Shown one piece after another: positions 2,083 to 52,294 of a stretch of DNA of 64,000 nucleotides. The notes under the pieces are model-generated. The model was not told the DNA's origin. It made no database searches and was given only the letters and a program-made list of their open reading frames with translations. The first letter of the stretch is position 1, and each line of letters opens with the position of its first letter. The translations under genes were made by a program, and so were the position numbers. Source of the stretch: Ginglymostoma cirratum (Eukaryota); contig JAHRHZ010000084.1 in NCBI GenBank assembly GCA_024137785.1, positions 7,093,573 through 7,157,572 on the forward strand. Direction: 5' to 3'.

Positions 2083-2959
2083 CGACTGTATAGCTTTTTT
2101 TCTTTAGTTCTGTTTCTCTCGCCTCAATTCGTCCTTTTCGTTTTAAATTCTTCTCATTTGTCATTAACTCAATCCTGCTTAAAAGCTTCGGCCGCAGAGA
2201 AATCTGTTTTTGGCAGTTTGTGTTTTCCAACACACGATTGTTGACACTCAAGTGTGAACTCTTACAACTTATCTAGATCATCTAAAATAGATCACGACTT
2301 CTCGCTCGTTTTTATTGGATCTCAGCATGTACTGTTAACACCATCTGAGTTTCTTTTTCTCTGGGAGAACAGCTGATAGATAATCAGTTAGTTTTTCTTT
2401 CAAGTCAATCACTATATTCAGAGAACTAATTCGTTCTTTATTCTGTTGCATCCAGCCAGGCAACATTAAGAAAAAATGACAATTGTATCCAGTTATAATG
2501 GAGAATAACATTACGGCTAAAAAAAGAATTTCTCAGTGAAGTGAATTGTCGAACATTTTGGATTACATATTCCGAAGGAATGCTCCTGTTATGGTAGTAA
2601 ATAACGTAATACAATTCATCCATTGATGTTCTGCAGCGCATTTTGCGGCCATTTCAGCTCCTATCGTGCTTTATAGGCAACGTGACATGTTTGACCTGTC
2701 TACATTTGCCATGTTGTCACTGTCATGTTGGAAACATGGTATTCACACTGCACAAAAAGAAGCCTCACAATAACATACTTCAGTGAAGTTGGTTGAGGGA
2801 TAAATATTAGCTAGGACACAATCAATGCGATGAGTGACTATGCTAACCACCTTTTATGCACCTCTTCTTGAATTTCACAGGAAGACATCTATATCGTATA
2901 TCATCTATAAGTGCATCACAATCTGACTACAAATCGACACACCAGCAATATGACACGGT

Positions 2960-3497
2960 TAACAAAGTGTGGAGCTGGAGGACCACGGCAGGCCAGGCTG
3001 CAGCAGAGGAACAGGAAAGTTGACGTTTCGGCTTGGGAAACATCCCAATTTGGCCCTGACTGCGACAACCTCGCCATAAACAACATCGAGAGCCTACAAA
3101 AACGATTTTCTCTACGGATCCTCAAGCACAAACTCTCAGCAATGCGCTGACATCTTCTGGCACTACGATCAACCTCACCCAGCTCAGAGCCTCCCTCTCC
3201 CAGATCAGCAAAGGACCCCTTCTGTTTTTCATTCTGCGCAGAATCCACAACTTTAAACAACGCTTTTACTCCACCCTGACTGAAGTTAAAAAGCATAAGT
3301 ATACTGAACCTACCTGTGCCTACCACCAAACACCGATCTCTCCAAACCGCCAAGTCTTCATTCCGATTTCTGAAGCAGGGTTCCAGACCAAAATGTCATC
3401 TTTCCTGTTTCTGTTATGCTGCCTGGCCTGCTGTGTTCCTCCAGCTCCACACATTGTTATGTCTGACTCTAGTACCTGCAATTCTTCCCATCTTGAC
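2960..3497. mobile_element. Penelope-like element fragment with inverted termini
   Basis: 10-bp TSD atgacacggt at 2950-2959 and 3498-3507; empty site at 58700-58709 in unit 3; ends are inverted copies of the same repeat family as 1938-2082. Confidence 0.75.
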
Positions 3498-4329
3498 ATG
3501 ACACGGTGTCATGTTATTAGATTCTTGCCCCACATATTCATTTCCACAGTTAATTTCTTCAAAGTGAAATGGACGGCCACTCGTTTATAATCTACCGGAG
3601 CAACCTGAAGTTTGCCAAAGAGCTAGGGCTGCTGTGTCAAGAGTTGTGATGTTAATTTGCCGGGGTATCAAGAATCAGATGCAGAACTCTCACTCAATAT
3701 TCTGAATTCCACTAGAATCCTGGCTCTGGATTTATTTTGGGAGATTGCGGCAATGGGGAGAAAAAAGTCACAGCTTAGTACTATGGCCTTGCGACTATCT
3801 CTTCATAATAATGTGTTTCGTGTGCATTGAGGTCTGTAAGAGTCCTTGGGAAATGCACGAAATTCCCATCAATTTCACATATGGCAGCTATATCACCAAT
3901 ATCATCAAGGTGACAAAAGTATATTTTATTCTCAACAGGATGTCATGAACTCGCTTTTGAAATATCTCGGTCTGTGCCAGAGGCAGAAGAGGAAACAGAT
4001 TTGTTCATTGCAAAATCTTATTACCAGGAGGAGATAAAAAGAAATGACCTGCATACAAATGTATCGCCCTCCAAAGGATTCACAATCATGAAGTACTTTT
4101 AATGTTTTGACAACTGTTGCAGTGCAAAAAAAAATGAAAGACAAGTAGCAACATAATGAATGACATGGACAACAATCGGGAAAAAAAAACATCTCTGAAT
4201 TATATTGGTCAGAACACCAGAAGAGCTTCTTGTGGCATGTGGACAATACCTATTAAAAGGAAGTATGAAAGTCATAATTCAGAGTAAAAGACGTTTTTAA
4301 ACATGATACCTTTTTCTAACAACTGTTGG

Positions 4330-6610
4330 AAGTGGGACCTGGGCATCGCTGGCTGGTCAACATTTATTTCCCATTCCTAGCAGCCCTTGAGGTGGTGGTG
4401 GTGAGCTGCCTTCTTGAACTGCTGCAATCCACGAGAGATCGTGATCTGCAAGGTCCTAAGGAAGGGAATTCTAAGATTTTGAACCAGTGACAGTGAAGGA
4501 TTTGTGATACATTTCCTAGACAGGATGGTCAGAGGCTTGGTGGGTAACTTGCACGTGTTCCCATGTATCTGCTGTCTTTTTCCTTCCAGATGGCAGGGTG
4601 TGGAACGTGCTGTCTAAGGATTTTTGGTACATTTCTGCAGCGTATCTTGTTGATGGTAGACACAGCTACTAATGAGCATTGGGACCGGGAAGGGAGTAAA
4701 CGCTTGTGAATGTGCTGCTATAAAAGTGGACGACATTGTCATGATGATATCAAGATTCTTCAGAGTTGCTTCAGCTGTATCTATCCAGGCAAAGTGAGGA
4801 GTATTCCATTACACTCCCAAATTGTGCCTTGTAGATGGTGTGCAGAATTTTGGGTGTCAGGAGGTGAGATATTCACTGCAGTATTCCTCACCTCCAACCA
4901 GCTCTTGCATTCATTGTGTTTTTGCGGTGATTCCTGTCGATTGTGGAGATTCGGTGATGGTAACTCAGTCGAATATCAAGGGCAGTGGTTAGATTGTCTT
5001 TTATTTGAGCTCGTCATTACTGGCCTTTGTGTGGTATTGATGTTACCTGCCATTTGTCATCCCAAGCCTGAATATTGTTCAGATCTTGTTGCATTTGAAG
5101 ATGGACTGCTTCAGCAGCAGAAGAGTCATAAATGTTGCGGAAGCTTATGCAAGCATTGCTGAATATCCCCACTTCAGACTTTATGATGGAAGGAAGGTCA
5201 TTGATGAAACAGCCAAAGATGGTTGGATTTGGACACTACTTGAAGAACTCCCGGAGGGATGTTCTGGAGCTGAGATAACTGACCTCCAACAACCACGACC
5301 ATCTTTGTATTTGCCAGGTATGACTCCAACCAGACGGTAGTTTGCACCCTGATGTCCATTGATTCCAGTTTTGAGAGGACTTATTGATGCCACATTCAGT
5401 CCAATGTGGCCTTGATGTCAAGGCCTGTCGCTCACCCCTCACTTCACCAACACAGGTCTTTTGTCCAAGTTTGGACCGAGGCTGTAATGAGGTCAGGAGT
5501 TGTGCGGCCCTGGCAGAATCCAAACTGGGCGTCATTTAGCACGTTATTATGAGCAGATGATACTGTTTATCACTGTTGATGACAACCTCCATCACTGTAA
5601 TTATGATTGAGAGTCAACTGATGGGGCAGTAATTGGCTGGCTGGATTTGTCCTGCTTTTTGAATACGGGGAATACCTGGGAAATGTTCCACATTATGAGG
5701 TTGATGCCAGCATTGCATATGCACAGGAAGACCTTGACTAGGGGAGCAGAAAGTTGCGGAGCACGAATCTTCAGTCTAATAGCTGGAATGTTGTCTGGGG
5801 TCACAGACTTTGCAGTATCCAGCGGCTCAAACAATTATCTTGATATCACGTGGGGTGGATCTAATTGGCTGAAGACTGGTGTTTGTGATGTTGGGGACCA
5901 TAGCAGGAGACTGAGATGGACCATCTACTCAGCACTTTTAGCTGAAGTTTACTATGCATGTTTCAGTCTGATATTTTTCATGAGTGTGTTGGAATTTCTA
6001 ATATTAGGGATGGTGATGTTTGTGAAGCCTCTTCCTCCTCCCGTAAATTGTTTAATTGTCCACCACCATTCATGCCTGGGTGAGGCAGGACATCAGAGCT
6101 TAGATGTTATCCATTGGTTGTGGGATTGCTTAGCTCTGTCTATCACTTGCATCTTATGCTATTTGGCAAGCAAATAGTCTTGTTTTGTGGCTTCACCTGG
6201 TTGACGCCTCGATTTTAGGTATGCATGGTGTTGCTTCTGGTATGCCCTTCTGCAGTTTCCATTATCAAGTATCAATCCCCCGGCTTGATGTTAATAGGAG
6301 AGTGGGGGAAAATGCCGTGACGTTGCAAATTGTGCTGCAGTACAATTCTGCTGCTTTTGAGGCCCCGCAGCACCTCATGCTTGCCCAGCCATTAATTGCA
6401 GGACGTGTTTTAAGTCTTTCCCGTTTAACACAAAACACAATGGAAGGTATTCTCAACATGTAGGCGGGGCAATGTCTCCACAAGGACTGTGTAATGGTCA
6501 CTCCTACCAATACTGTAATGGACAGATGCATCTGCTGCGGGCAGATTGGTAAATGTGAGGTCGCGTATATTTTTTCCCTCTCTTCCTGGTTCCCTCACCA
6601 TCTGGCTAAT
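4330..6610 (-). mobile_element. Degenerate CR1/L2-group LINE (same family as 545-1478)
   Basis: Minus-strand ORF pieces PDNIPAIRLKIRAPQLSAPLVKVF, VFKKQDKS, SIGRSDHYTVLV (endonuclease SDH motif); many frameshifts. Confidence 0.85.
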
Positions 6611-8179
6611 CACGATTTTCCACTCTGTATTATAGTGTTAAAATTTACTAAGTTCTCATAAAAGATTGCAGTCCTTGGAAAGTTACTCGGATTCTTCTTC
6701 CGCCTGTGCTGCCTGATCTGCTGAGGGTTTTCAGCACTGATACATTGCATGCTGCAGGGAAATGCCACTCAATCAGACAAACGCAAGATGTAAGATTCCA
6801 GATTTGTTATGCCTTCATTAATTAGAGGAAAAACTGGGAGTGTTAAACAGAGTACTCTTGTTCCTGTGTGACGAAGCATAAACAAATCTCGAATCGTTAA
6901 CTCCCAATGTGGTTCAGACAAAAAAAAATCAACAGATCCTGAAAAATCACGAATGCATTTCAAATATTTAACATTTAATGTCATGTCTCCATATTCGGGA
7001 TTTTCATTCCATCAGTCCAAATGTACCTTTGTATGAGATGTTATTGATATCTGACCTTTGTTATTTTGATATTGCGCCCTTTTATACTTAGTAACAATTA
7101 CCTGTTGGAAATTCTTGTGTGACTTTGTTCTTCACCGTGGAAGTTTCTGCAGCAGCCGCGGGAAGCACCACAAATACTTGAGGCACAAAATTGGGCCTAC
7201 GTGTGGCGATTCATCTCTGCATCATTGGTAACTATCCTTAACTCCTTTGGATTTTCTTTATTGTATGTCGGCACAGGGATAACAGTGTCATTCTGAGATG
7301 TCATCAGAACCCGCCAATTGCTGGGATACAATGAGGGGAAAAAATAAAGTGACCAATCATTCTTCAACAATCAAATTGCCAGCCGAAATTCGCTCCTTAT
7401 GCAAGTTATATTAACCTAGTCTCAGATTTGAGACGTACGCTCAACCACGAGGGATGCCAAGGCCTTAACGCGGATATTTATCGGAATGTTATTAAGGCTG
7501 TGAAACTTCAGTGATGTGAGGGAAGTGGTGTTATTCTCCTTGATGGATAAGTTAGCGGCATTCAAGCCTATGAAAAGTTTTGATGGCATAAACTAATTAG
7601 GATAATACGTTTTCTGCCAGAGAATCCCGTAAGTAAGGGACAGATTGTTATAACCAGTCCTGAATTTCATAGTGGCAATTAGTTCCAGCCTAGCTCTTCC
7701 TGCTGAGGATCAAATGTTCGTGCAGATCCGCTGATGACGGTTACCACCGGCATTCTTGAATGATATTCGTCTACTTATTCAGGTCAAATAATTCTATTCA
7801 GCAAACTGCCACTTGCAACGAGCTGGAAGTCTACAAAACATGGTCTTACTTTCGCAAAAGTTCCAATGCTCCTTGAACGTTGTCCAAGCTTTTTTCTTCT
7901 CGCCGTTCCATCTCCAGGTATCACCAAACGCAATATTCTGATTATTTGTTGTGTTTTCAGGGGAATAATAGCTCCAAAAGAAAACGATTTTGAAATAACT
8001 CTTTTTAAAATACCCGGCTAAAATGAAGCTCAAACGGCCCTCATCTGCTCTGAAATGGTGAAATGGAGATGAATATAATTATCAATCTAATGGTTCCTAC
8101 TGGAAACTCGGGTGATCGGAAGATGTTAAAATGACGTGGCATGAAAATCAGAGGTCACAGGATAAATAGTTGCTTACGT

Positions 8180-8194
8180 GAAGAGGAATCGCTT
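8180..8194 (+). promoter_or_regulatory. Candidate ETS/PU.1-type site (GAAGAGGAATCGCTT) upstream of the leader exon
   Basis: GAAGAGGAATCGCTT is identical in all three copies (8180, 44648, 62353) while the flanks differ; function is inferred only. Confidence 0.35.
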
Positions 8195-8565
8195 AGGTGA
8201 AGGAGCTGGCACACTGCGGCCTGAAATAATATTTTCGGTACTAAACTACCGATGAAAGGTGAGTGTTGACAAAGGACGTCTTTCGAACGCCGTGTCCCTG
8301 TGGTGACTGAAAACTAAACAAGATTGTTGAACTTCTCGTGGAAATGTATCAGCGGGAAGTTAGGAGGGGACTCCGACCTAACAAACTCCTATGAAGAAGT
8401 ACAACCATGTCCAATACGCTACATTAGTCATATGATAAGTGATGTCATAGTCTCGCTTTTAACATATTTATCTATGAGACGCATTGGTCTCACCCGACCC
8501 AAAACCACTCAGAATACTGCCCGCGCTTACAGCAAAGCACTCACTTTTTTTTTCTCGGTTGCAAT

Positions 8566-8620
8566 ATGTCGGCGAGAGCAGCGTTTCTGTTCATGACTCT
8601 TCTGATCATGCCTTGGCCAG
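8566..8620 (+). CDS. Copy 1 leader exon, MSARAAFLFMTLLIMPWP (signal peptide)
   Basis: ATG 8566, hydrophobic core, CCAG|gtact phase-1 donor; 55-nt length conserved in copies 2 and 3. Confidence 0.85.
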
Positions 8621-8830
8621 GTACTCTTTAATGTTACCATGTGCCCTCTTCGAGTAACTTAGACTGTCTTTCATATTTACAGCTACTGCATTACAAATTT
8701 AGGTGCCCTGTTTCTCCAATCCGATGCGTGTGATTGTTCTTATTTTTTTTCTTGTATTTTACTCCTCTGTTGTTTTTCTTACCCTGCTGTCTACAACTAA
8801 TTTTTCTTTATTTTACTTATTTTTTAATAG

Positions 8831-9136
8831 TCACTAAAGTAACTTCGAGCAAAGTAGATCAGTTTCCGAAACTTTTGAAGGCAGTCAGAGGTGACAATGT
8901 TTCCATCTTCTGCACATTTCCCATATTTGAAGATGTTCCTGAAGTATTTTGGTGGAGACGCAATGAGGAATCTTTTCTGGGACCCGACAGCAGAAAGCGA
9001 TTTCATGTCCAGAAAGGAAGGGGCTCACTTCATGTTCTCAATGTCACTATCGCTGACTCCGGAATGTATTATTGTAAAATAAAACATCAGCAAACTATCA
9101 TTGCAGCTGGAAGTGGCTCTTTGCTGACAGTGTGCG
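8831..9136 (+). CDS. Copy 1 Ig V-set exon with in-exon J-like G strand
   Basis: Polypyrimidine-tag acceptor and G|gtaagt donor; 306 nt, phase 1-1; B-strand Cys (IFCTF), C-strand Trp (FWWR), DSGMYYC, GSGSLLTV. Confidence 0.95.
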
Positions 9137-9474
9137 GTAAGTGATACTGTACAAGGGGCAGAAAACGTCTTCAGCTGTTTTGTGTAATTTATGTGGCCTG
9201 CGATTTTATAATTCGAGGAAAATCCAGTGAAAGCGAATTCGCTCCATAGAGTCAGGGGGATCTCTTCCCCTTTGATTTTGTTGTTCAACGGGCTTTGATT
9301 CATTTTCGCCTGTTTTGCGCCATTTCTCAAGATCAATTCCACCACTCATTGTCATTATGACATTGCACTGTGCCGTTAATATAATGCGTGCAGAACCGGT
9401 TGATAACGCTTCAATACAGTGAAACAGCATAACTGTTTGAATTCTGGGGAGAAATTAATTTTTGGCTAGAATCC

Positions 9475-9940
9475 TGTAACAAGAGTAGGTGTTACTGGCG
9501 AAATTCAGAAGGGCTGGCAGCATCTGTGTGAGCGAACGTTTATAGTCCAGTGATCCTTCTTCAGAACGGTTCTGACGAAGGTCACTGGACTCAAAATGTT
9601 AACTGTCTTTTCGCTTCACAGGCAGCCTCAAAATAAGGGGGAACGTCTCCGTTCAAAGAGTTGTGAATCCGTGGAATTACCTGCCGTTGAAGCAGTTAAG
9701 GCTATACCTTTGAATGTTTTTAAGACACGGATAAGTCGATTTTTGAACAGTAAATGAATTAATCGTGATGGTGAGTGGGCGTTAAGTCGAGCTCGGTCCA
9801 CGAAAAGTTCAGCCATGATGTTATTCAATGGCGTTGGAGGCTCAACGGGCCAGATGACCTATTCGTGCTCCTATTTTTTCTGCTGTTACGTTCCGATGCT
9901 GCCAGACCTGCAGAATTTCCCCAGTAATTTATATTTTTGT
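9475..9940. mobile_element. Inverted Penelope-like terminal repeats with a nested CR1 3' fragment (~9627-9890, +)
   Basis: Hairpin agtccagtgatccttcttcagaac/ttctgacgaaggtcactggact; CR1 3' motif gttgtgaatccgtggaatt; orthologous copies at ~46050-46520 and ~63640-64000. Confidence 0.65.
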
Positions 9941-11749
9941 GTCATGTGGTAAAATGCTCGGTTTACCTCTTACCAAAATAAAAGTGCTAAAATGCGACAG
10001 TAGAAACAATGTTGACGCAAAATCAAAAATGCTGCGTATTTTGGAAAGTTTGAAGCAAAAATACAATTTACTTAAAACGTGTGTGAACATCTACTGAGGT
10101 AATACGAACATAAGAATTAAAAACAACAGTAGGCCATTCGTCCCTCAACTCGACTCAGGCACGCAATCAAATTATGGCTGACTCGTTTGCGGTCTCAACG
10201 GCGCTTTCCCACCGACCGCGGTACCTTTGGATATCGCTGTAAATCCAAAACAGTTAACGTTTCAGGTCATAATCTTTCATAAGAACAAATATAACAGCTT
10301 ACACATCATTTTTAAAGAAGATTATGAAGACCACCTAATAGTCATCCACAATATGCATTGATTGTAAATTCAGGTGAATAATAGCATGCCACAGCCACTA
10401 TTATACAACCAACACAGGGTAACTTTTCGACCAGCAAATTGCTGATCGAAACATTCTGTACCAAACTGTTCAAAAGTGGAGATGGATTGCAAGGGAAGTT
10501 AATCCTGGGGATCAAAGGAATAGAATAAAATCGGACAAACAGAGTTGAGATACAGTCCAACCATGACCTAAGTGAATGGCAGAGTGAGCTGTGCTGGTGT
10601 GGATCCGATGGATCATATGTCATACTTCAACATTGAAGGGATTCTAAGATTCTATTAGTGAGAGAAATTCAAAGGCAGAATCGCCAAGCATTTTGACTGC
10701 GCATTTTCCAATACTGATATTCTCCAAACGCCATTTCTTACACAAATGAATCGCATGATCCAGTGAGACGACAAACGTTGATCTTGCTCTAAACGCTGGA
10801 TTCTATACCCCGTTATGAAGTTTCCACGACAATGAAGTTACCCACTTCCTATGTGGCTCGCCAACTGGACTTTCTGTAATACGCGCACAACAGGCATCGT
10901 GAATGAAGGACGGCACCAAACATAACTAAAAGCCTCTGCGCTCCTGTGTTTGTCATGTATTATTTAGATGCAATGGTACCCATGATAGGACACCAAGATA
11001 ACACGCATATTTTTGTTCTCCGTGAGAGTTCTGTGGTATCTAAAGCAGGCCTGAGGGGGAAATGGACGAGTTCTCAGACTTTGCAGGTAATAAAAACCCG
11101 CGTAAATTTGGAAATGAATGAAATATCGACCTTAATAATTCCCTCGTAATAAAATATATAAAAAAAACAGAGAACAGATGTTAAGAATATTGATTGTAAT
11201 AAACAGCAGAACAATGCAAACCCTGCAATATTATACCCAGCTGAAAACTGATTGTAGATCGAGGGGCCACACGTTCGCTTTAGTAAATAGTTAATGTAGA
11301 ATTGATTTTGAAAGGGGGTTTTCAGGCGAAGACGGGAATATGAATCAATTGTTGTTTCAGGCTCAAAGGGTCGAATAGCCTTCTGAATGGAGCGGACTGC
11401 TTCACCTCCCAATTCGTATGTTTCCTCCAGGTAGAATCTCCTTCAAGGAAAAAAAAACTACGCCCAACAAACTGAATGCACTTTCAGAAGGGCAAAACCC
11501 TCGGGATTATGTTAAGACCCACACTTTATCAAAGCTTTTCCTTCCGGGCTCATCCTCGCTGTGCATTGTTTGAAAAACATCCTAACATTGTGTGGTGTGT
11601 TTTTACAAACAAATGCAAAGACCAAGGTTAAAATACGATGACAAAGAAAACTATTGTCGTATTAGGAATAATGTGCGACGGGGTTACGGTGTGGACGGGA
11701 GGAAACAGAAGAGAATGTGATTTTTTTAATGTTTTACGTTCTGTTATAG

Positions 11750-12046
11750 TTCCACCAACCCACTTGACAATCATCCCCGTGGAAGGAATTTCAGGAAATT
11801 ACTTGAAATTCGAGTGTGAAACCTCTGCCTTTTATCCGGAGGATTTAGGCATCACCTGGCTAAGAGATGGTGTCAATCTTCAGGCTGGAATAGAGACTGT
11901 GAAAAACAAGACCGTGGATGGGCTTTATGAGGTTACTAGTTCATTGGAAGAAGCGCAGCCTGTGCGAGGCAGTGTAATTTATACCTGCCTGGTATCTCAT
12001 GTTTGTCTTAAGGTGCCCGCTAGCGTCAGCTACACCTTTTATCGCG
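11750..12046 (+). CDS. Copy 1 Ig C1-set exon
   Basis: tag|tt acceptor and G|gtaag donor; 297 nt, phase 1-1; FECETSAFYPEDLGITWLRDG, DGLYEVTSSL, YTCLVSH are C1 signatures. Confidence 0.95.
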
Positions 12047-13234
12047 GTAAGGTTCAAAATGTTCCCACTTGGGAGTTGGGGTTTCTAATGGAGCCGGGAT
12101 GTGATTGTGGAAGACCTAAATGTGTATCTTTTATGGCACTGAAGTAGCTGTAACTCGACGATATCTTGTAAATGTGACCGGTGTTTATTCTCAATGCAAC
12201 TTATTCAAGCAGTGCATGTATATTGTTTATCCTGTTCAGCTAATCTCCGCCAACAACGTCTTATGTTGCTTATACCCTAAACTTGGAAAATTCTGGCCTT
12301 TTAATGTCTCCCTATGTCTTTCAATGTTTAAGACACTTCTTTAGCCTTATTTCTCTCTGTTCCAAGACTACTTTATGTTTGGCTGATAATGCTTTGTGAA
12401 ATGTCTTATAATTATTTGTAGCAAGGTTCAAGGTGCAGCATAATTGCAAGTTGCTGTTATATATACTAAAATTTGCAGTCGGTGTTGTCTGAGAAGGCTG
12501 GAAAAGGGTGTCATAAAGCATACAAAATCCTTTCAGATCTTGAAAGGGTAAATGAGGGAAGGATATTTCCCCTGGCTGATGGTCGAATCAGAAAACACAG
12601 TTTCAAAGTAAGGGGCAGGTCACTTAGGACTGAATTGAAGAGGGATTTCTTCAACCAGAAACTTGGGAATTCTACACCACCCTCCCATTCTCCCCACCCC
12701 GACACTCCGCCAGACTGCCGGAAAAGTTCGGTTACCAAGAATATGAATACCAAATCGACAGAGTTCCAGACATCAAATGATATGTAATTAGCGTGAGACA
12801 ATCACACTTACTAAGTTCGGTAGCGCGTGCCCGAAGATCCCAACGTCTATCCCGTTCCTGTTGTTATGCTCCTTTATTACTGCGGTTAGGAAGTAAAAAC
12901 ATTGCCAGATCTTGCAATCGTTGTGCATCTGTCTGGTTTCAGACATTGAGTAATTAAATGCAAATTCCTTTACACATAGTAAACAACCCTCTGGTACAGC
13001 GAGAAGTTTCCCGCGCGTCTAACTCATGAAATGCGTTTTCTCCATAAAATGCATTGCTGAGCTGCAATCGATGTCCACCGATGCACATTAAGGCTCTTGT
13101 ATAGCTGTTCCCACCGAAATTAAAACGCTCCAAATTGGCTATCAGTGGGGTTATCCTGGGAGACATCTATGCAATTTATCATCCTGCGCATGATGCTTTG
13201 CGCATGTAACTCGCTCTGTTCCACAATTGTTCAG

Positions 13235-13363
13235 GTCCATCAACTGTTGATCCTGTAAATGAAGTTATCAATCTTCCCATGATCGTTGGATGTGCAGGAG
13301 GGGCATTGGCAATGTTACTATTCATAATATATTTGGTGACACTGAAATTGAAGGCATCGGCTG
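13235..13363 (+). CDS. Copy 1 stalk + transmembrane exon (GPSTVDPVNEVINLPMIVGCAGGALAMLLFIIYLVTLKLKASA)
   Basis: ttcag|gt acceptor and G|gtaag donor; 129 nt, phase 1-1; uncharged hydrophobic stretch followed by KLK. Confidence 0.9.
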
Positions 13364-13937
13364 GTAAGAGTCTTTCTTATTTCGCTGGGTACTTTTTATT
13401 TCCTTAGATCCAGCGTAAAAGCATGAGGGCGGGTGACGCATCAAGGACTGCGACTTCACATCGTGGAGATGGGAGTCTAACGTAGATGTGAAATGCAAAT
13501 ATTTCGCTTTCTTTCCGAACTAAACAGTCGGTTTATTCACGTCCATGTTGCTACAATCGAAATTATTGTTCAGTTAGAGTCCAGTTCCTAAACACGAAAC
13601 TTTGTTCCGTAGATTTTGACTTTCGGCATTAAAACGGATGTTTTCGAACTGACGACTAGATATACACATTCTCAGATTTTATTTCCGTTGTAATGTTGTG
13701 GTGTCAACGGGCCGCCGACTCACAATTGGCACTATCACACAGAGACAAACTCTACACCATTGGGTGTAGCGCGATGTGAACAATAAGCAGGTGAAAACAC
13801 TGCGCTGCTGAAACCTTCGAGCTGTAGGTTTTCGTACTATATTAAAAAGTACATGTTTCTAGCAGCGAAGGCATGACACTAGATTTGGTGATACACCGAT
13901 TTTGTTACTGACGGTGCATTTCTGTACTTTCTATTAG

Positions 13938-13981
13938 GCAAAGGGAGAAAATCGGTGGAAGCAGGTCAGAATGACGTTCCG
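13938..13981 (+). CDS. Copy 1 cytoplasmic exon 1 (GKGRKSVEAGQNDVP)
   Basis: ttctattag| acceptor and |gtaatg donor; 44 nt, phase 1 to 0; same length in copy 2 (50763-50806). Confidence 0.8.
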
Positions 13982-14939
13982 GTAATGCGACATTATTCTT
14001 TATATTCCTAACAAAAATGGTAGAGAAGGTGGGCCCATAGGAAGGCTAGCAATGAATTTTATATTCAGTGGAAATTGCTTACTTTTTTTCACAGAACATA
14101 GAATTCTATCGCACGGGATGCAAATCCCGCGCCTCTGCCGTCTATGTTTTGATTCAATTGGTTCCACTCTCACGGTATTTATCTGTTTATCTCATTTTTC
14201 GTTTCAATACAATTCATTTTTGAAGGTTCCTGTCTAATCTCTTTCTGTCACTCTGTGTTTGTGGGCAGCTCCCTGTAATGAGCTGCAGCAAAAAAAGGTC
14301 TCCCCAGATGACAGAAGACCCTTCCAGTCTCGAAGACCTTTCCGTCTTCCTAATGTAGTGCCCGGAGTGGTTCACAATACCTCACGTCTTTCGGTGCTTT
14401 ATGCTTTTGTTAGCAGCGCTGACGGCAATCTGTGTGGCAGTGGGCCGGGAAGGCGGGTTGAGGGGGAAGAGAGAAGAGGGGTGGAACAATGGATGTGGCA
14501 GTGTTGCGGGAGAGTTTTTGACAGGATTCTAATTGTTGGTCGCAATTTAGAGGATGTAAATTTTCCAGAAGTGTAACGTGAGCAGACTAAGTCTTAGCTG
14601 TCAGATCTTCTAATCAGTTAGGCTAATTATGGAATAAGAAAACTGCCGTCGACACAACAAGGTCAAAGAGGGCTCAAGATAAACCAGCTAATAGTAAATA
14701 CGTATTATTCGTTCGCTAGATGTTAAAATGTAGATGAATACATTAAATGCTCTGGGATTCATCTTTAGATCATTACTCCGCACCACATTGGTGAAATATT
14801 AGAGGCAAATAATTGAGAGTTGACAAAATAAAATTGCAACCATGTTTGATTGTTCACTGTCTACATACTTAACCGTGTCAGGTGCAGTTCCAATCGGTGA
14901 TGGCTGGCTTCACAATCAAACTCGCTGCTGTCATAGTCA

Positions 14940-15420
14940 TAGAGTCACAAAGTCATAAAGCATACAGCACGGAAACAGAACCTTCAGTCCTACCAGACCA
15001 TACAAATTTAACTAGAACCACCTTTCTGCTCCTGAAACAAATCCCTCCAAACATTTCCTATTCATGTACTTACGTAAATTTCTTTTAAACGTTGTAGTTG
15101 TACCCACATCCACTACTTCCTCAGGAAGTTCATTCCATACCCGAACCAGTGTCTAAAAAAATTAACCCCATGTACTTTCTTTTTACATGTCTCTCCTCTC
15201 ACCTTAAAAATATGCCCCCAATCTTGAAATAACTATCCTAGGGAAAAGACAACTGCCATTAACGCTATCTATACACCTCATTATTTCATAAACTTCTATT
15301 AGACCGCCTCTGAACTTCCTCTGCTCCAGTGAAAAAAAAAGTCCCAGCCTATCCAGCCTTTCTTTATAACTCAAACCTTTCATTCCTGGCAACATCCTGA
15401 TAAATCTATTCTGAACCCTC
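14940..15420 (-). mobile_element. CR1 LINE 3' fragment
   Basis: MLPGMKGLSYKERLDRLGLF..LEQRKFRGGLIEVYEIM is the typical CR1 C-terminus. Confidence 0.85.
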
Positions 15421-15450
15421 TTATCAATATTTCATATCTTATTTTCCTAG

Positions 15451-15520
15451 CTGAGACAAAGACTGACTGAAGAAAATGTCACGTATGCTAATGTAAACTT
15501 GAAAGCCAAAAAAGTTCCAG
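15451..15520 (+). CDS. Copy 1 cytoplasmic exon 2 with ITIM VTYANV (15478-15495)
   Basis: ttttcctag| phase-0 acceptor; LRQRLTEENVTYANVNLKAKKVP; CCAG|gtaaga donor. Confidence 0.8.
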
Positions 15521-15654
15521 GTAAGATAGAAGAATTGTCAAGTATAAAGTATCCAGGTCAATATTATGATAATGGAGTTAATTTTTTTTTTTGAAAAAGA
15601 TACCATACAGTAGGAAGGGAAGGGTCTGTTGTAATTTTGACTTTATGGAGTAGA

Positions 15655-16170
15655 AGATGCAGTGGTAATCCAGATGTCAAGGTTAATACTATGGGGATAC
15701 GGGTTCAAATCCCACCAGAGCTGCTAAATGAGCTTAATTAGAATCGATAAATCTAGAATTTAAAGCTAGTCTCAGTAATGTCGATCATATGAATTGTCAT
15801 TAATTGTTATCAGAAAAGTTCCCTTTTTCTTTTATACAGGACACTGGTGAGAACACTGGTAAACTGTATACTTTACTGGTGACCATTTTGACGGAGGAAT
15901 ATTAACGTATTGAAAACAACACAGAGAACGTTTACTGGACTAATACTTGAAATGAGTAGATTCCATTACGTGACCTTATCATGATAAGACATGGATTCGC
16001 TAAGGGACTTCAGGGAAGGAAATCTGCCATCCTTGAGTAGTCTGCCCCACATGTGTGTCCAGAGCCACAGCAATATGGTTGACTCCCAACTAACTTCTGG
16101 GCAATTAGGGATGGGCAATGAATGCTGACCCGTCCAGTGATGCCACATGTTGTAAATGAATGAACAAAAA
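15655..16170 (+). mobile_element. tRNA-derived SINE sharing its 3' tail with the 545-1478 LINE family, interrupted by a CR1 piece (~15815-15965)
   Basis: B-box GGTTCAAATCC; tail gggcaattagggatgggcaatgaatgctg; same nested structure at ~52555-53070. Confidence 0.7.
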
Positions 16171-16174
16171 ATAC

Positions 16175-17900
16175 ATAACCCATTCAGACCATCGAGTTTA
16201 CTCCACCATCCAATGAGATCAAGATTGATCTGACAAACCTCTTCGCAAAGTTCCTGCCTCTTCCCTATACAATTTCATTCCTTTACTAACTAAAAATCTA
16301 TTTTAGGCTCGAATATTCTTAATTACTTAACTGAGTCAACCTTTCATAAGAAATAATTCAACAAATTCACTACCCTGTCAGAAAAGAAGTTCCTCCTCAT
16401 CTCTGTTTTAAATATGCAACCATTTAGTCTGATATTATACCCTCTGGTCCTTGACTCTCTGACATAGGAAACTTAATCTCCACATCTATCCTGTCAAGTC
16501 CCCGAAGAATCTTGTATATTTCAATCAGGTCACCTCTCATTCTTCCAAATTTCGATGAGTACGGGTTCAGCCTATTCAATCTCTCCTCATAAAAGACTTC
16601 CTTCATTCCTGGTAACAGCTCAGTGACCCTTGGCTGGACTGCCTCCAGTGCCAATACATCTTTTCTGAGATAAGGGGAAGAAAACTGTTCACAGCATTCC
16701 AGCTGAGGCCCTAACTATTGCCTGATGCAGTTTTGGCAAATACCCCTACTTTTATATTCCATTCCCTTTGAAATGAAGGCCCATGTGCCTTCTCTAAAAT
16801 CTGCTGAAAATAGGTTCTAACTTTTTTTTTGTGACTCATGCATGAGGAATCTCAAATCCGACTGTTCCATAGCTTTCTACTGTCCTGAATTCAAACAATA
16901 TTCATCTCCTCAATCCTTCCTGCGACATTGCATTACCTCACTTCTCCCACATTACATTCCATCAGCCAACTCTTTGTCGCTTAATGTAACCTGCCTATAT
17001 AATTCGAAAAAAAACTTTTTATGTCATCCTCACATCTTACCATCGCAATTTCATTAATGTTATCCGCAAAATTGGCCATTGTGCATGCACTTTCTGCATA
17101 CAAGTCTTCAAAATATATATTTGGAAAAATTGTGGCCCTGCCACTAATCCCAATGGTACTGAAAGAGTTCTAGATTTTCATTCATAAAATGCCCTGTCCC
17201 CATCCTAATTCTCACTGCTCTAGTAATTAGCCAATGCTCTTTGGATGTTAATGACCCAGAGACCGTGGTCTTTTATCTTATTAAGTAAGCTAATGTGTGG
17301 TATTTAAGCAAATGTTTTCCTGAAAATCCCAATATGTTACATCCACTGCTTCTCCTTTGTCTGTATTCCTTTTAAACTCCTTAAAGAATTCTAGTAGGAT
17401 TGTCAGGCATGACGACTCCTACATGAATCCATGCTGAATCTGCTTAATATTATGAGCTTCCAAATATTCTGCATCATTTATCACAGACTGATGCATTTCC
17501 CCAGTAATCAATGTTCTGCTAACTGGCCTATTACTGTCTACTTCCCTTTTAAATAAAGATGTTAGTATGGCAATTTTTTAAATATCTAGGAGGTTTTTTT
17601 CATAATCAAAGGATTTTCAGAAGATTACTACTGGTTCATTAAGTACTATGGTTACTTCCTTTGATATCCTAGGATGCTTCCAATCAGGTCCAGGGGACAT
17701 ATTAGTCTTATACCCCATTCGTTTCCCCGCTCCCTTTTCTCCAGTGATAGTTATTGTACTTATTTTCACTCCTCCTTTTACCCTTGAATATTTATTAATT
17801 TGGAATTTTCGCGCTGTTTTCCACTGTGAGAAGTATTCATTCAACTGTTCTACCATTTCCTGTTTCCCCATTATTCTTTTCCTCCACCTCATTTTGGGTT
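16175..17900 (-). mobile_element. Degenerate CR1 LINE
   Basis: ALEAVQPRVTELLPGM...GRMRGDLIEIYKIL; SPGPDWKHPRISKE. Confidence 0.85.
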
Positions 17901-17919
17901 CTCTCTCCACTTTTCTAGG

Positions 17920-18330
17920 CTGTAGGCTATAGGATAGGTATCCTCTGGAGTTTAGAAGAGTCAGAGATGACTTAATTGAATCATATAAGATTCTGACAGA
18001 CTTGACCAAGTGGATGTTGAATCTTTCCTTTGATTGGGAGAATCTAAAACTAGAATTCATAGTTTAAACATAAGAGATCGTCTATTTAAAGCAAACGAGG
18101 ATTTTTCTTTTCTTTCATGGGGCTATGTATCTTTTGAATTCCCTTCCTCAAAAGGCAGTAGATGCAGAAACTTTAAGTTTTTTTTAAGGCAAGGGTGGAT
18201 AGATTCTTGATTACCAACCAGATGAAAGGTGATTGAGGTGGGGGTTTTGAGGAGCAGGAATGTAGAGTTGAGGATACAGTCAGATCAACCATGACATGGA
18301 ATGATGGCGCGAGCTTGAAGGGCCGAGTGG
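17920..18330 (+). mobile_element. CR1 LINE 3' fragment
   Basis: ctggagtttagaagagtcagagatgacttaattgaa (LEFRRVRDDLIE) followed by CR1 3' UTR. Confidence 0.75.
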
Positions 18331-19116
18331 CAGCCAGACACTCAATTCAAGACAATTAGCGACAGGCAATAAACACTGACATTGTCACTGCCATCCTTCT
18401 GCCATGAAAAAAAAAAGACAAAGTCATGCCACTGTTCGGGAATCGACGTCTCTTCTGCCTGTTTCATCGGAAATAGAAATCAGGGGAGATATCAAACGGG
18501 CTGCGGCTCTTATCATCAGATTTAGGCTGGAATACAATCAAAATTATTCGTGTTCCTTTTTATGAATTAGCAGTTATAATGATGGTCCTGAGCAATAACA
18601 AAAGAAACTTATCTGGTAAAAGTGGCAAAAATGCATTTTACAAACAAAGTGCGAATTCAAGAACAATCCGCCTTACGCCTAAGCCGTCGAATCCAGCACC
18701 AGGAAAAAAAAAAAAAAATCCATGCAGGCAAAGGAGCGCACTGTCGATGAAATTTAATGTAATACCTTCAATGTCTTTTGGTACCGCACCAAACACTAGA
18801 GAATTGAAAGGTCCCAAGTTTAACCTCCCAACTGTATTGTGTCCGACCAAGACTCACCATGTTCGTCTTGGATCCCACGGATCGGAAGATCAGCAGCGGT
18901 GGGGTAAAGGCAGTTGAGATTTGTGACTTGAGGCCTCTGAATGGAATAAGCAGATCAAATTGGCTGTCACGCCTCAGAAATTGGGCCTTGAAAGGGATAT
19001 TTTGCAATATCAGCTTTCGAAACACATTTAAAACGACGGTATTTGATTCATTTGTGATTTTAATCGAAGTAATAACCTGTTTTCTAAAATGAGCAATACT
19101 GAACGAGAAGTTCAAA

Positions 19117-19246
19117 CCCGCACTTCTGCACTCACATCCCCTCCCCGCAACAGTAGCAAAGACAGAATCCCCCTCGTCGTCATCTATCACAAAAACTAAC
19201 CTCCGTCTTCAACGTATCGTTTTCCGCCAATTCCGCCACCTGCAAT
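19117..19246 (+). mobile_element. Penelope-like element coding fragment (RT thumb to GIY-YIG linker)
   Basis: Translates KDRIPLVVIYH..TNLRLQRIVFRQFRHLQ with one frameshift; absent at the paralogous site (~56090). Confidence 0.65.
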
Positions 19247-19424
19247 TTTTTACGGCACGGTTGAATAGAAATCAGAGATAGAAAACAATACCAAACTCGG
19301 TTACAATCTGAAGTTGGTAACTGTTTATCGGAAATTCCACCAAACCTTCTTAGTAAAATCTCGACTGCCTCTGGCAATAGGTCATCGACGGACTAACGGG
19401 AGATACTAAATTTTACTTTCACAG

Positions 19425-19565
19425 ACCAAGCAACGAAGCAAAGATAACAAGCTGACTTTGCGTCGTTTTCGAAATTGTCGATTCCAAAAAAGCATCAAAA
19501 CTAAACAGCAAGACAGTTCAGAAATATATGCAGAAGTGAAGGAGACAAGGAAATCGAAAAGCTGA
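19425..19565 (+). CDS. Copy 1 terminal cytoplasmic exon (phase-0 frame ends ...DSSEIYAEVKETRKSKS*; phase-1 frame gives DQATKQR*, stop 19445-19447)
   Basis: ttttactttcacag| acceptor; 141-nt open frame with a tyrosine motif; homologous to 56291-56418. Confidence 0.65.
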   Translation, partial: TKQRSKDNKLTLRRFRNCRFQKSIKTKQQDSSEIYAEVKETRKSKS

Positions 19566-19659
19566 GACTCTGAACATACTGGGAACATGGGAGACATTAA
19601 TGGATGTAGGTCCAGAGAATTTGGTTGTGCGTCATAAAATGTGTTCCAATCAAAATTAT

Positions 19660-25698: not shown

Positions 25699-25865
25699 GT
25701 AGTTTTTGCAGTCCCATCCCTCCCACCAAAGCTGCAATTAAAGGAACCAGTCATGCTGTGTTGCACATTCCCACTCTTTCTAGAGAAGTAAAAGGCAATG
25801 TTTCATCACTGGTCTCATGGCGAGGACGGGTTCCTAGACCATGGAGAAGTGAAAAGCGAAGTTAG
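25699..25865 (+). pseudogene. Relict V-exon 5' half of a diverged fourth paralog
   Basis: ttttcag| acceptor; KAAIKGT then, after a frameshift, VMLCCTFPLFLEK*KAMFHHWSHGEDGFLD, aligning to KAARGDNVSIFCTFPIF...WWRRNEESFL. Confidence 0.65.
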
Positions 25866-26150
25866 CCCCGTTGCCTTACAGTACCAAGGACCCGGGTTCG
25901 ATTCCAAACTCGGTCGATTGCCTTTGTGGAGTTTGCACATTCTCCGAGCGCCTGCGTGGGTTTCCTTCGATTGCTCAGGTTTCCTCCCACATCCCAAAGA
26001 TGCGCAGTTTACGTGGATTGGATACGCCAAATTGCCCATTGCGTCTAGCGTGGTGAATGCAGGGATAGGGTGCGTCAAGGTGGGATGCTCTGCGTATGGA
26101 CCGTGTGGTCTCGAATGTCCAAATGCCCTGCTTCTGCGAATCTATGAGCC
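25866..26150 (+). mobile_element. HE1-type V-SINE
   Basis: B-box GGTTCGATTCC plus V-domain gtggagtttgcacattctcc...gggtttcct...ttcctcccacatcccaaagatg. Confidence 0.85.
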
Positions 26151-26159
26151 ATGTAGGAA

Positions 26160-26267
26160 ATGTATGAGGTTGTCAGCACTTCTCAAGCACCAGAGCCTTC
26201 CTCCAATGAAGCTGCATTCAGCTGCCAAATGTCTCACATTTCTTTTCAGAGTCAATTACATCTTTGA
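26160..26267 (+). pseudogene. Relict C1-exon 3' half of the diverged paralog
   Basis: MYEVVSTSQAPEPSSNEAAFSCQMSHISFQSQLHL* aligns without gaps to LYEVTSSLEEAQPVRGSVIYTCLVSHVCLKVPASV. Confidence 0.7.
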
Positions 26268-26924
26268 ACTTATCTTTAGAACCTTTCCCTCGTTTATAAT
26301 TTCCCAGAAGACAAGGGCACCTCGTAGCACAAATTGATCCATTTGTTGATATTTTGTTTCGACATTTTAAAACGAATTTATACGTGCTCTGTTGATTACA
26401 CAATCTCATGTATCATTGGGTGTTCTTGCTGATTGAATTAACGCTAAAACGTAGAGGTCTTATATTTCCATTACTCTTTTGCAGATGCTGCTAACGCCAC
26501 TATCGTTTTACAGCATCACGAAATTTATTGGGAATAACAAAAAATAACAGTGTTAGTGGTTATTGTTGGGAAGTAATTGAAACTAAGGTAGTTTCTGTTC
26601 ATAGCTGTTCTGTTCCATCAAATATATTTTCTTTTAAAAATATGTTCATGACAAACAAATTAGCGCATGCACAGAAGTTGTCGGCTCTTTAGTTGATAAT
26701 TTTTTTCCATTTCACATAACGCTCTGGCACGGAGATTAGCAGCTTGCAATCTTTTCTTCAGATCCAAATTTTTTGATTTGCAAGCCGCACGTTTATTATA
26801 ACATCGAAGCTGGAAGCCGGTAAACAACTCCATATTAAACGATAAGATGGAGAAATGAGAAATGTGGACATTTAGAACATAATTTAAACATTGGAAGTGG
26901 AAAACAAATCATCCCAGAATAATG

Positions 26925-45021: not shown

Positions 45022-45076
45022 ATGTCGTCGAGAGCAGCGGTTCTGTTCATGGCTCTTCTGCTTATGCCTTGGCCAG
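45022..45076 (+). CDS. Copy 2 leader exon, MSSRAAVLFMALLLMPWP
   Basis: 55 nt, CCAG|gtact donor. Confidence 0.8.
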
Positions 45077-45287: not shown

Positions 45288-45593
45288 TCACTAAAGTAAT
45301 TTCGAGAAAAGTAGATCAGTTTCCCAAACGATTAAAGGCGGCCAGAGGTGACAATGTTTCCATATTCTGCACATTTCCCATATTTGAAGATGTTCCCGAA
45401 GTACTTTGGTGGAGACGCAATGAGGAACATTTTCTGGAATCCGACAACAGAAAGCGATTTCATGTCCAGAAAGGAAGGGCCTCACTTCATATCATCAATA
45501 TCACTGTTGCAGATTCCGGAATGTATAATTGTAAAATAAAACATCAGCAAACTATCATTGGAGCTGGAAGTGGCTCGTTGCTGACAGTGTGCG
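45288..45593 (+). CDS. Copy 2 V exon (open frame; DSGMYNC, GAGSGSLLTVC)
   Basis: 306 nt, intact splice sites, no stop; missed by the ORF track. Confidence 0.9.
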
Positions 45594-48550: not shown

Positions 48551-48847
48551 TTCCACCAACCCACCTGACAATCGTCCCCGTAGATGGAATTTCGGGAAAT
48601 TACTTGAAATTCGAGTGTAAAACGTCTGCCTTTTATCCGGAAGATTTAGGCATCACCTGGCTAAGAGATGGTGTCAAAATTCAGACTGGAATAGAGACTG
48701 TGAAAAACAAGACCGTGGACGGGCTGTATGAGATTACTAGTTCATTGGAAGAAGCACAGCCTGGGCGAAGCGGTGTAATTTATACCTGCCTGGTATGACA
48801 TGTTTGTCTGAAGGTGCCCGCTAGCTTCAGCCACACCTATAATCGAG
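48551..48847 (+). pseudogene. Copy 2 C1 exon with premature stop (YTCLV*H)
   Basis: 297 nt, intact splice sites, TGA at 48796-48798 replaces Ser. Confidence 0.9.
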
Positions 48848-50762: not shown

Positions 50763-50806
50763 GCAAGTGGAGAAATTCGACGGAAGCAGGTCAGAATGAC
50801 GAGCCG
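50763..50806 (+). CDS. Copy 2 cytoplasmic exon 1 (GKWRNSTEAGQNDEP)
   Basis: 44 nt, AG/GT intact. Confidence 0.75.
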
Positions 50807-52265: not shown

Positions 52266-52294
52266 CATCGATATTTTATATCTTATTTTCCTAG

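What the first reader, a model, noticed from the sequence alone, without database searches (positions are those of the whole stretch)
8566..19565. Tandem family of non-rearranging, antigen-receptor-shaped V(J)-C1 inhibitory receptors in a cartilaginous fish
Seen: one exon encodes a complete V domain including a J-like diglycine G strand (AAGSGSLLTV), followed by a C1-set exon (FYP..I.W, YTCxVxH), an uncharged TM and an ITIM. I saw no heptamer/nonamer RSS next to any V exon. At least three or four paralogs lie within 64 kb. Established: C1 domains occur in few families (Ig, TCR, MHC, beta2m, tapasin, SIRP and a few non-rearranging VJ-C1 genes), and mammalian SIRP-alpha is V-C1-C1. Inference: this is a clustered, rapidly turning-over family of shark V-C1 SIRP-like receptors resembling the proposed pre-RAG ancestor of antigen receptors. 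Whether it is undescribed cannot be judged from the sequence alone.
Basis: partly seen in the sequence, partly recalled or inferred. Interest (0 to 1): 0.9.

Follow-up and report, generated by a model that had tools for sequence, protein, structure and literature searches.

The report
Decaying shark SIRP-like receptor gene cluster
The window holds four tandem copies of a shark immune-receptor gene built like one pre-joined antibody or T-cell-receptor chain with an inhibitory tail, but only one copy is unbroken, that copy has lost most of its signalling tail and gave no RNA reads, and annotation pipelines already predict the family in sharks, rays and chimaeras.

Summary
At 8566-19567 (+) lies a seven-exon gene with canonical AG/GT splice sites. 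It has a leader, one V exon that includes a J-like G-x-G strand, one C1-set exon, an uncharged TM and an ITIM (VTYANV). No RSS flanks any V exon.

The window is a tandem duplication with a unit of about 36.5 kb:
- Copy B (45-56.4 kb) has a TGA in C1, two lost acceptors and a tail frameshift.
- Copy C (V at 63013-63318) has two stops.
- A fourth relic (25.7-26.3 kb) is half a V and half a C1 around a repeat.

Copy A is impaired too. A 40-bp deletion removes the second tyrosine motif and shifts the frame, so the last exon stops after seven codons and only one of four ancestral tyrosine motifs stays in frame. No read fell on any of the five copy-A exons (leader to cyt1) within the 6-kb stretch laid, in two RNA raw-read runs and two contig sets.

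The gene belongs to a large family found across Chondrichthyes. Pipelines name its members "SIRP-alpha-like", "NCR3LG1-like" or "Ig lambda-like". I found no paper in the held library that describes it.

Kinship to true SIRPs is plausible but not shown. The family has one C1, not two, and its profile scores UrIg2, SIRP-alpha and Ig lambda about equally.

This scan has already reported the same family on other stretches of this genome.

The parts
2354..19658 (+). Duplication unit A of the tandem segmental duplication
   Evidence: Self-BLASTN: 2354-19658 matches 37753-56511 at 77-84% identity in colinear blocks
8566..8620 (+). Copy A leader exon (MSARAAFLFMTLLIMPWP, ends in phase 1)
   Evidence: ATG and GT donor read; aligns to leaders of homologues
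8831..9136 (+). Copy A V exon with a J-like G strand (AGSGSLLTV) in the same exon
   Evidence: Pfam V-set 3.4e-10; AF2 pLDDT 92.7 with the G strand split at G-S-G; both Gly nearly invariant in 46 family members; AG/GT flanks
11750..12046 (+). Copy A C1-set exon
   Evidence: Pfam C1-set 1.2e-8; AF2 pLDDT 92.2; VIA Z 14-15 to MHC-II beta2 and antibody CL; AG/GT flanks
13235..13363 (+). Copy A stalk and uncharged transmembrane exon (..NLPMIVGCAGGALAMLLFIIYLVTLKLKASA)
   Evidence: Hydropathy scan, sequence, 70% identity to the TM of Heterodontus P0156
13938..13981 (+). Copy A cytoplasmic exon 1 (GKGRKSVEAGQNDVP), ends in phase 0
   Evidence: colinear with SKKDSAEAGQAEEQ of P0156
15451..15520 (+). 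Copy A cytoplasmic exon 2 with ITIM VTYANV; shortened by a 40-bp deletion relative to copy B, so it ends in phase 1
19425..19567 (+). Copy A last exon. Entered in phase 1 it reads DQATKQR and stops at 19445-19447. In frame 0 it is open to TGA 19565-19567 and holds EIYAEV, with the third motif destroyed by compensating indels
45022..45076 (+). Copy B leader exon
45288..45593 (+). Copy B V exon (open frame; YYC changed to YNC)
48551..48847 (+). Copy B C1 exon with an in-frame TGA at 48796-48798
50046..50174 (+). Copy B TM exon; the acceptor AG used in copy A is lost
50763..50806 (+). Copy B cytoplasmic exon 1
52295..52404 (+). Copy B cytoplasmic exon 2, keeping motifs 1 (VAYAIV) and 2 (HTIYS)
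56285..56420 (+). Copy B last exon: acceptor AG lost, 8-bp deletion, and a frameshift between LTYVVL and SALYAEI
62739..62793 (+). Copy C leader exon
63013..63318 (+). Copy C V exon with stops TAG 63132-63134 and TGA 63198-63200; the rest of the gene lies beyond the window end
25750..26324 (+). Fourth, old relic: the first half of a V exon and the last half of a C1 exon, either side of a repeat
   Evidence: tblastn; translation and repeat copy at 27488-27613

Best explanation
The region is one unit of a tandemly duplicated cluster of non-rearranging V(J)-C1 receptor genes. They belong to a large family of cartilaginous fishes that is SIRP-like in architecture.

Copy A (8566-19567) would encode a type I membrane glycoprotein with these parts, in order:
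- a signal peptide;
- a short V domain with no C'' strand and an antigen-receptor-type G-x-G bulge in strand G;
- one C1-set domain;
- an uncharged transmembrane helix;
- a cytoplasmic tail whose single in-frame ITIM is VTYANV.

Inferred mechanism, by analogy with ITIM receptors such as SIRP-alpha: the V domain binds an unknown ligand, a Src-family kinase phosphorylates the ITIM, SHP-1/SHP-2-type phosphatases are recruited, and activation of the carrying leukocyte is dampened.

Shown here: the exon anatomy, the domain classes, the absence of RSS and family membership. Inferred: the ligand, the cell type and the signalling.

The locus is decaying. Copy A has lost three of the four ancestral tyrosine motifs from its reading frame. 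Copies B and C and a fourth relic are pseudogenes.
For: - Anatomy: seven exons with AG/GT flanks and consistent phases.
- Domains by sequence: Pfam V-set and C1-set, both above their cutoffs.
- Domains by structure: confident AF2 models. The nearest solved folds for V are shark VNAR, TCR V, CD79b, Ig lambda V and SIRP-alpha d1. For C1 they are antibody CL and MHC-II beta2, Z about 15.
- No rearrangement signals.
- Colinearity: all exons map in order onto Heterodontus 'SIRP-alpha-like' P0156 at 63-70% identity in V, C1 and TM.
- Family size and spread: 108 representatives at E<1e-30, from sharks, rays and Callorhinchus.
- Family make-up: long-tailed members with 1-5 ITIM/ITSM-like motifs, and short-tailed members with Arg/Asp-His in the TM.
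- Selection: exons are 91% identical between A and B against 77-84% for the flanks, and dN/dS is 0.40. Three-way branch estimates made by hand from the counts give about 0.25 on the A branch and about 0.8 on the B branch.
Against: - No RNA read at 95% identity or more lay on any exon within 8500-14499. This covers about 1.9 and 2.1 thousand million letters of two RNA raw-read runs plus two contig sets. The tissue is unknown, so this is weak negative evidence.
- The 40-bp deletion makes the last exon terminate after seven codons, leaving one ITIM. ITIM receptors that engage the tandem SH2 domains of SHP phosphatases usually need two phosphotyrosines (my knowledge).
- Several positions invariant in six homologues are changed in copy A, for example LEPD to LGPD and PPTPL to PPTHL.
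Confidence: 0.62

Rival explanations
1. Copy A is itself a silent or dying pseudogene, so the whole window is a graveyard of the family with no working receptor.
For: There are zero reads on the five copy-A exons laid, in four runs. The tail is truncated by a frame-shifting 40-bp deletion, and the last exon carries compensating indels that erase the third tyrosine motif. All three neighbouring copies are dead.
Against: All seven exons keep open frames and canonical splice sites. dN/dS is well below 1, and lower on the A branch than on the B branch. One canonical ITIM remains in frame. The RNA runs are of unknown tissue, and only 24-57% of their reads were read.
Confidence: 0.33
2. The family is not SIRP kin. 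It would be a separate old lineage of non-rearranging V(J)-C1 genes, nearer to UrIg/UrIg2, to the chicken PRARP genes or to Ig light chains, and its tyrosine tail would be convergent.
For: The family profile scores UrIg2 highest among solved chains (3.5e-20), ahead of SIRP-alpha (1.8e-15) and Ig lambda (about 1e-12). The V exon alone does not list SIRP d1 among its 60 best sequence matches. There is one C1 instead of two. Pipeline names are inconsistent: SIRP-alpha-like, NCR3LG1-like, Ig lambda-like, tapasin-related. Searches from the tail and from the coelacanth relative did not reach tetrapod SIRP-alpha.
Against: The UrIg2 score is summed over three C domains; its best single stretch is 26.9 bits against 33.2 for SIRP-alpha d1-d2. 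The first small non-chondrichthyan representative is a coelacanth V-C1-TM protein with tyrosine motifs, named SIRP-like by the pipeline. Full-length members carry a four-motif tail in the order ITIM, YxQT, ITIM, YAEV, which resembles SIRP-alpha as I recall it. UrIg is secreted, with three or more C domains (PMC12227049).
Confidence: 0.25
3. The genes encode B7-H6/NCR3LG1-type V-C1 ligands rather than receptors.
For: Some members are named NCR3LG1-like. The B7-H6 C domain matches at about 1e-12.
Against: The match to B7-H6 starts only at profile position 78 and so misses most of the V domain. The V domain has the J-like G-x-G strand and resembles VNAR/TCR V. The family has paired ITIM tails and charged-TM forms typical of receptors.
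Confidence: 0.04

Closest known systems
Mammalian SIRP family (SIRP-alpha inhibitory; SIRP-beta activating through DAP12)
   Same: Both have a non-rearranging V domain with a J-like G-x-G strand, followed by C1-set domain(s), a TM, and either a multi-tyrosine ITIM tail or a short tail with a charged TM. Human SIRP-alpha d1-d2 aligns in one stretch across V and C1 (E=1.8e-15, GSGSQLTV against GAGTELSV). The idea that V-C1 links SIRP to antigen-receptor origins is already published (PMC2785349).
   Different: There is one C1 domain instead of two in nearly all members. The V domain is short, without C''. Copy A keeps only one tyrosine motif. The charged-TM forms carry Arg plus Asp-His rather than a single Lys. 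CD47 binding, synteny and tail homology were not tested.
UrIg / UrIg2 of elasmobranchs (PMC12227049)
   Same: Both are non-rearranging, with a single-exon VJ followed by C1-type domains, and both occur in cartilaginous fish. UrIg2 has the highest summed sequence score among solved chains (3.5e-20).
   Different: UrIg is secreted, with three C domains. Nurse shark UrIg2 has nine C domains. Both are single or few-copy genes linked to the MHC or to the Ig/TCR complex. The family here has one C1, a TM and an ITIM tail, and is a large multigene family.
Chicken PRARP genes (Fu et al. 2019, cited in PMC10751288 and PMC11599192)
   Same: [quoted passage not shown]
   Different: No comparison was possible. 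The paper is not held and no PRARP sequence was available through a tool.
Shark IgNAR V domains and TCR V domains
   Same: These are the best structural neighbours of the V exon (Foldseek E about 2e-8, TM 0.75-0.81). They are also the only sequence matches among the 60 best that run from strand A through strand G. The V domain shares the VNAR format of a short domain lacking C''.
   Different: Those domains are assembled by RAG-mediated rearrangement. Here the whole domain is one germline exon with no RSS. Identity is only 20-27%.
Teleost NITRs and other paired V-type receptor families
   Same: These are also large, fast-evolving clusters of non-rearranging V(J) receptors with inhibitory (ITIM) and activating (charged TM) members, together with many pseudogenes.
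   Different: As I recall, NITRs have V or V plus I-type domains and no C1-set domain. No sequence link was tested here.

Membership tests
Non-rearranging VJ-type V domain | V-set domain with strand G and its G-x-G bulge encoded in the same exon as the rest of the domain | tested here: met
   Single exon 8831-9136. Pfam V-set 3.4e-10. G93 and G95 nearly invariant in 46 members. AF2 shows the G strand split at 93-95.
Non-rearranging VJ-type V domain | No recombination signal sequences; the exon ends at a splice donor | tested here: met
C1-set Ig domain | Sequence and fold of the C1 set | tested here: met
   Pfam C1-set 35.6 bits against a cutoff of 21. VIA Z 14-15, rmsd 1.3-2.0 over 87-97 residues, to MHC-II beta2 and antibody CL.
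SIRP family | Ectodomain of V followed by two C1-set domains | tested here: not met
   There is one C1 exon between V and TM in copies A and B. Most family members also have one; Amblyraja P0016 has two nearly identical C1 domains.
SIRP family | Sequence kinship with bona fide SIRP ectodomains beyond other V-C1 proteins | tested here: inconclusive
   The family profile gives SIRP-alpha 60 bits, Ig lambda about 50 bits and UrIg2 76 bits summed. No tree with real SIRPs could be built, because no SIRP sequence was available through a tool.
SIRP family (alpha type) | Cytoplasmic tail with four tyrosine motifs forming two SHP-binding pairs | tested here: not met
   Copy A keeps only VTYANV in frame. 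Full-length relatives such as P0012, P0156 and P0125 do have three to four motifs. Homology of those tails to tetrapod SIRP-alpha was not reached.
SIRP family | Binds CD47 | not testable with these tools
   This needs a binding assay.
SIRP family | Synteny with the neighbours of SIRPA (human 20p13) | not tested
Paired inhibitory/activating receptor family | Similar ectodomains joined either to ITIM tails or to short tails with a charged TM | tested here: met
   This holds at family level. About 25 fetched members have an uncharged TM with 1-5 motifs, and about 9 have an Arg...Asp-His TM with a short tail. No charged-TM exon was found in this window.
Rearranging antigen receptors (Ig/TCR) | Separate V and J segments flanked by RSS | tested here: not met
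UrIg/UrIg2 | VJ followed by three or more C1-type domains, secreted or with many C domains | tested here: not met
   Here there is one C1 followed by a TM and a tyrosine tail. UrIg features are taken from PMC12227049.

The most novel reading that the evidence does not exclude
The cluster is part of an undescribed, Chondrichthyes-wide paired-receptor family that represents the ancestral single-C1 form of the SIRPs. On this reading it would be a surviving membrane-bound, myeloid-type V(J)-C1 receptor close to the gene that RAG invaded, and its short VNAR-like V domain would be the nearest non-rearranging relative of IgNAR/TCR V domains.
Probability: 0.12. Interest if true: 0.8.

Novelty: new variant of a known kind. 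Interest (0 to 1): 0.4.

Why it matters
C1-set domains are confined to antigen receptors, MHC and a few associates. Non-rearranging V(J)-C1 genes are therefore examined as witnesses of the pre-RAG state (PMC2785349, PMC12227049, PMC10751288).

A large family of this kind, present in sharks, rays and chimaeras and with both inhibitory and probably activating members, would push SIRP-type paired receptors back to the base of jawed vertebrates. It would also give a second set of shark V(J)-C1 genes to compare with UrIg.

This window adds little beyond that. It shows the birth-and-death side of the family: one impaired copy and three dead ones. Pipelines already predict the family, and this scan has found it repeatedly in the same genome.

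Tried and rejected
- RSS: a strict pattern and a loose heptamer/nonamer scan found nothing near any V exon.
- RNA: one read-laying run on 8500-14499 with four runs gave no exon reads. The only hits were partial matches to repeats at 9500-10300.
- Tail homology: a search with only the tail of Callorhinchus P0036 found only chondrichthyan relatives.
- Bridge through the coelacanth relative P0167: it found only itself.
- C1 homodimer (complex prediction, two copies of the C1 exon): no verdict, score 0.11 against a mark of 0.32. This is not evidence either way.
- Activating-type TM exon in the window: tblastn with charged-TM members found none.
- PRARP paper: not held. PRARP kinship is untested.
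- Literature: ten searches for SIRP with shark, cartilaginous fish or elephant shark returned no description of the family.
All searches and folds were done exon by exon, by reference.
- B7-H6-type ligand reading: rejected, because the V domain is of the J-like receptor type and the tails are ITIM tails.

Full report
**Observation**

The ORF list and direct reading show a V-type exon and a C1-type exon at the stated places.

- The V exon (8831-9136) runs from the acceptor through ...YYCKIKHQQTIIAAGSGSLLTVC to a GT donor. Strand G, with its G-x-G motif, therefore lies in the same exon as the rest of the domain.
- The C1 exon (11750-12046) carries AFYPEDLGITW and YTCLVSH.
- Pfam gives V-set at E=3.4e-10 and C1-set at E=1.2e-8, both above their curated cutoffs.
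- A hydropathy and motif scan found an uncharged TM segment at 13235-13363 and VTYANV at 15451-15520.
- All seven exons have AG/GT flanks, with phases 0-1-1-1-1-0-1.

**Cluster structure**

Self-comparison shows a tandem segmental duplication. 2354-19658 matches 37753-56511 at 77-84% identity. A third, older unit starts near 58.3 kb and runs off the window at about 70% identity.

tblastn with the copy-A exons finds V exons at 45290 and 63015 and a C1 exon at 48547. It also finds weak V and C1 fragments at 25750-26324.

State of each copy:
- Copy B has TGA at 48796-48798 in C1, and YYC has changed to YNC. It has lost the AG acceptors of the TM exon and of the last exon, and a frameshift separates its third and fourth tyrosine motifs.
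- Copy C has TAG at 63132 and TGA at 63198 in its V exon.
- The relic is the first half of a V and the last half of a C1. Between them lies a repeat that recurs at 27488-27613.

**Domain identity**

- C1 exon, by sequence against solved chains: it hits Ig constant domains, UrIg2, SIRP-gamma and SIRP-alpha, B7-H6 and MHC-I alpha3.
- V exon, by sequence: its core hits I-set proteins. Among the 60 best matches, only a shark VNAR and two TCR-alpha chains align from strand A through strand G.
- AF2 models, built exon by exon with 46-sequence family alignments, are confident: pLDDT 92.7 and 92.2.
- The V model has strands A, A', B, C, a short C', D, E and F, and a G strand split at residues 93-95. 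It has no C'' strand.
- Foldseek ranks shark VNARs first for V, then TCR V, CD79b, Ig lambda V and SIRP-alpha d1, all at E of 2e-8 to 2e-7. Discrimination among them is weak.
- The C1 model matches antibody CL and MHC-II beta2, with VIA Z of 14-15.

**No rearrangement signals**

- A strict heptamer-12/23-nonamer pattern has no match.
- CACAGTG occurs 10 times against 8.8 expected, none beside a V exon.
- A loose scan finds nothing within 500 bp of the three V exons.

**The family**

The C1 exon finds shark proteins at 63-70% identity, from Chiloscyllium, Heptranchias, Scyliorhinus and Heterodontus. Their pipeline names are discordant: Ig lambda-like, NCR3LG1-like and SIRP-alpha-like.

A profile of six of these, searched against 1.84 billion representatives, gives 108 hits at E<1e-30. 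Every small one I looked up among the top 148 ranks is chondrichthyan, including Mobula, Amblyraja, Narcine, Hypanus and Callorhinchus.

The first small non-chondrichthyan hits are:
- a coelacanth V-C1-TM protein with LLYTTI and TVYAEI, named SIRP-like by the pipeline (E=3e-25);
- a frog (V-C1)x2 protein.

Among the fetched members there are two TM types:
- about 25 with an uncharged TM and a 70-150-residue tail holding 1-5 ITIM/ITSM-like motifs;
- about 9 with Arg near the start and Asp-His at the end of the TM, and a short tail.

This is the pattern of a paired receptor family. Copy A is of the first type. All its exons map in order onto Heterodontus P0156.

**Kinship with SIRP**

For:
- Human SIRP-alpha d1-d2 is the best match among solved chains in which one stretch spans V through C1 (33.2 bits for that stretch, 60 bits in total), with GSGSQLTV aligned to GAGTELSV. 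Domain d3 also aligns.
- Many pipeline names point the same way.
- So does the coelacanth hit.
- Full-length tails show the order ITIM, YxQT, ITIM, YAEV, which resembles the SIRP-alpha tail as I recall it.

Against:
- UrIg2 scores higher in sum, and Ig lambda is only about 10 bits lower.
- There is one C1, not two.
- Two searches aimed at reaching tetrapod SIRP-alpha found nothing.

I therefore call the family SIRP-like. I do not file it as a member of the SIRP family.

**The tail of copy A**

Aligned with copy B, exon 15451-15520 lacks 40 bp. The missing stretch holds the second motif (HTIYS in B), and its loss moves the donor from phase 2 to phase 1.

Entered in phase 1, the last exon reads DQATKQR and stops at 19445-19447. 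In frame 0 the same exon is open to 19567 and holds EIYAEV. There, the third motif (LTYVVL in B) reads LTLRRF between compensating indels.

Skipping exon 15451-15520 would join phase 0 to phase 0 and give a tail with EIYAEV only. That is possible but unsupported.

Weak matches at 18618-18764 (A) and 55524-55604 (B) suggest degenerate extra tail exons.

**Expression**

On 8500-14499, no read fell on any of the five exons within that stretch (leader, V, C1, TM, cyt1). The runs were a polyA RNA-seq run (24% read), a second RNA run (57% read) and two contig sets. Only partial repeat matches at 9.5-10.3 kb were laid. The tissues are unknown, so this is weak negative evidence.

**Selection**

- Exons are 91% identical between A and B, against 77-84% for the flanks.
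- dN/dS is 0.40 for both V and C1.
- Splitting the V-exon counts over three branches by hand gives about 0.25 for A, 0.8 for B and 0.55 for C. The counts are small.
- This fits constraint on A and neutral drift in B.

**Mechanism**

If expressed, copy A is a type I membrane receptor. Its V domain binds an unknown ligand, and its single ITIM, once phosphorylated, recruits SHP-type phosphatases. These signalling steps are inferred from ITIM receptors in general. One ITIM instead of four predicts weak signalling.

**Literature**

- SIRP-alpha as a V-C1-C1 link to antigen-receptor evolution is established (PMC2785349).
- SIRP is listed among joined-VJ IgSF genes (PMC11599192).
- UrIg and UrIg2 are the current candidates for the gene RAG invaded, and that paper does not mention SIRP (PMC12227049).
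- VJ-C1 genes, including PRARP, are discussed for tetrapods (PMC10751288).
- No held paper describes a chondrichthyan SIRP-like family. Subscription journals are mostly not held.

**Earlier scan notes**

The same family has been reported on several other stretches of this genome. Three lie on the same piece: 220 kb upstream, and 40 kb and 191 kb downstream. Notes on this window led me to the tail decay and to the relic, and I checked both myself.

**Limits**

All searches and folds were exon by exon.
- The N run at 27088-27487 was left untouched.

Noticed in passing
window 25750-26324: An old fourth paralogue. A V fragment (strands A-C, with a stop) and a C1 fragment (strands E-G, FSCQMSHISF) lie 400 bp apart, with a repeat between them. 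The second half of V, the intron and the first half of C1 are missing.
   Followed up: partly
window 25896-26021 and 27488-27613: Two copies (79% identity) of a short interspersed repeat. Its translation has the VEFA.SP...GFLR.LRFPP look that I recall from fish SINEs. The second copy abuts the N run.
   Followed up: no
window 27088-27487: A 400-base run of N (assembly gap or masked). It was left untouched.
   Followed up: no
window 18618-18764 and 55524-55604: Weak tblastn matches (E about 0.3-1) to the tyrosine-tail exons of Heterodontus P0008, with the tyrosines lost or with a stop. These may be degenerate duplicated tail exons inside the last intron.
   Followed up: no
window 596-1279, 35071-36597, 4332-5221: Fragments of a reverse-transcriptase-bearing retroelement (RVT_1 at 22 bits, below the cutoff), present in direct and inverted copies in both duplication units.
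   Followed up: partly
window 9500-10300: RNA reads and contigs of the same species lay only partly on this intronic stretch and run on into unlike sequence. This looks like transcribed copies of a repeat located elsewhere.
   Followed up: no
window 9131-9133 and 12004-12006: Copies A and B share two extra cysteines. One is at the V-C1 boundary (LLTVC, also in copy C and recurrent in the family as TVC-V/A/I-PP). The other is in the C1 G-strand region (SHVCL, where relatives have SHVSL or SHISL).
   Followed up: no
P0016 (Amblyraja radiata): One family member has two nearly identical C1 domains in tandem (V-C1-C1). This is either a recent exon duplication that mimics the SIRP-alpha layout or an assembly or model artefact.
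   Followed up: no
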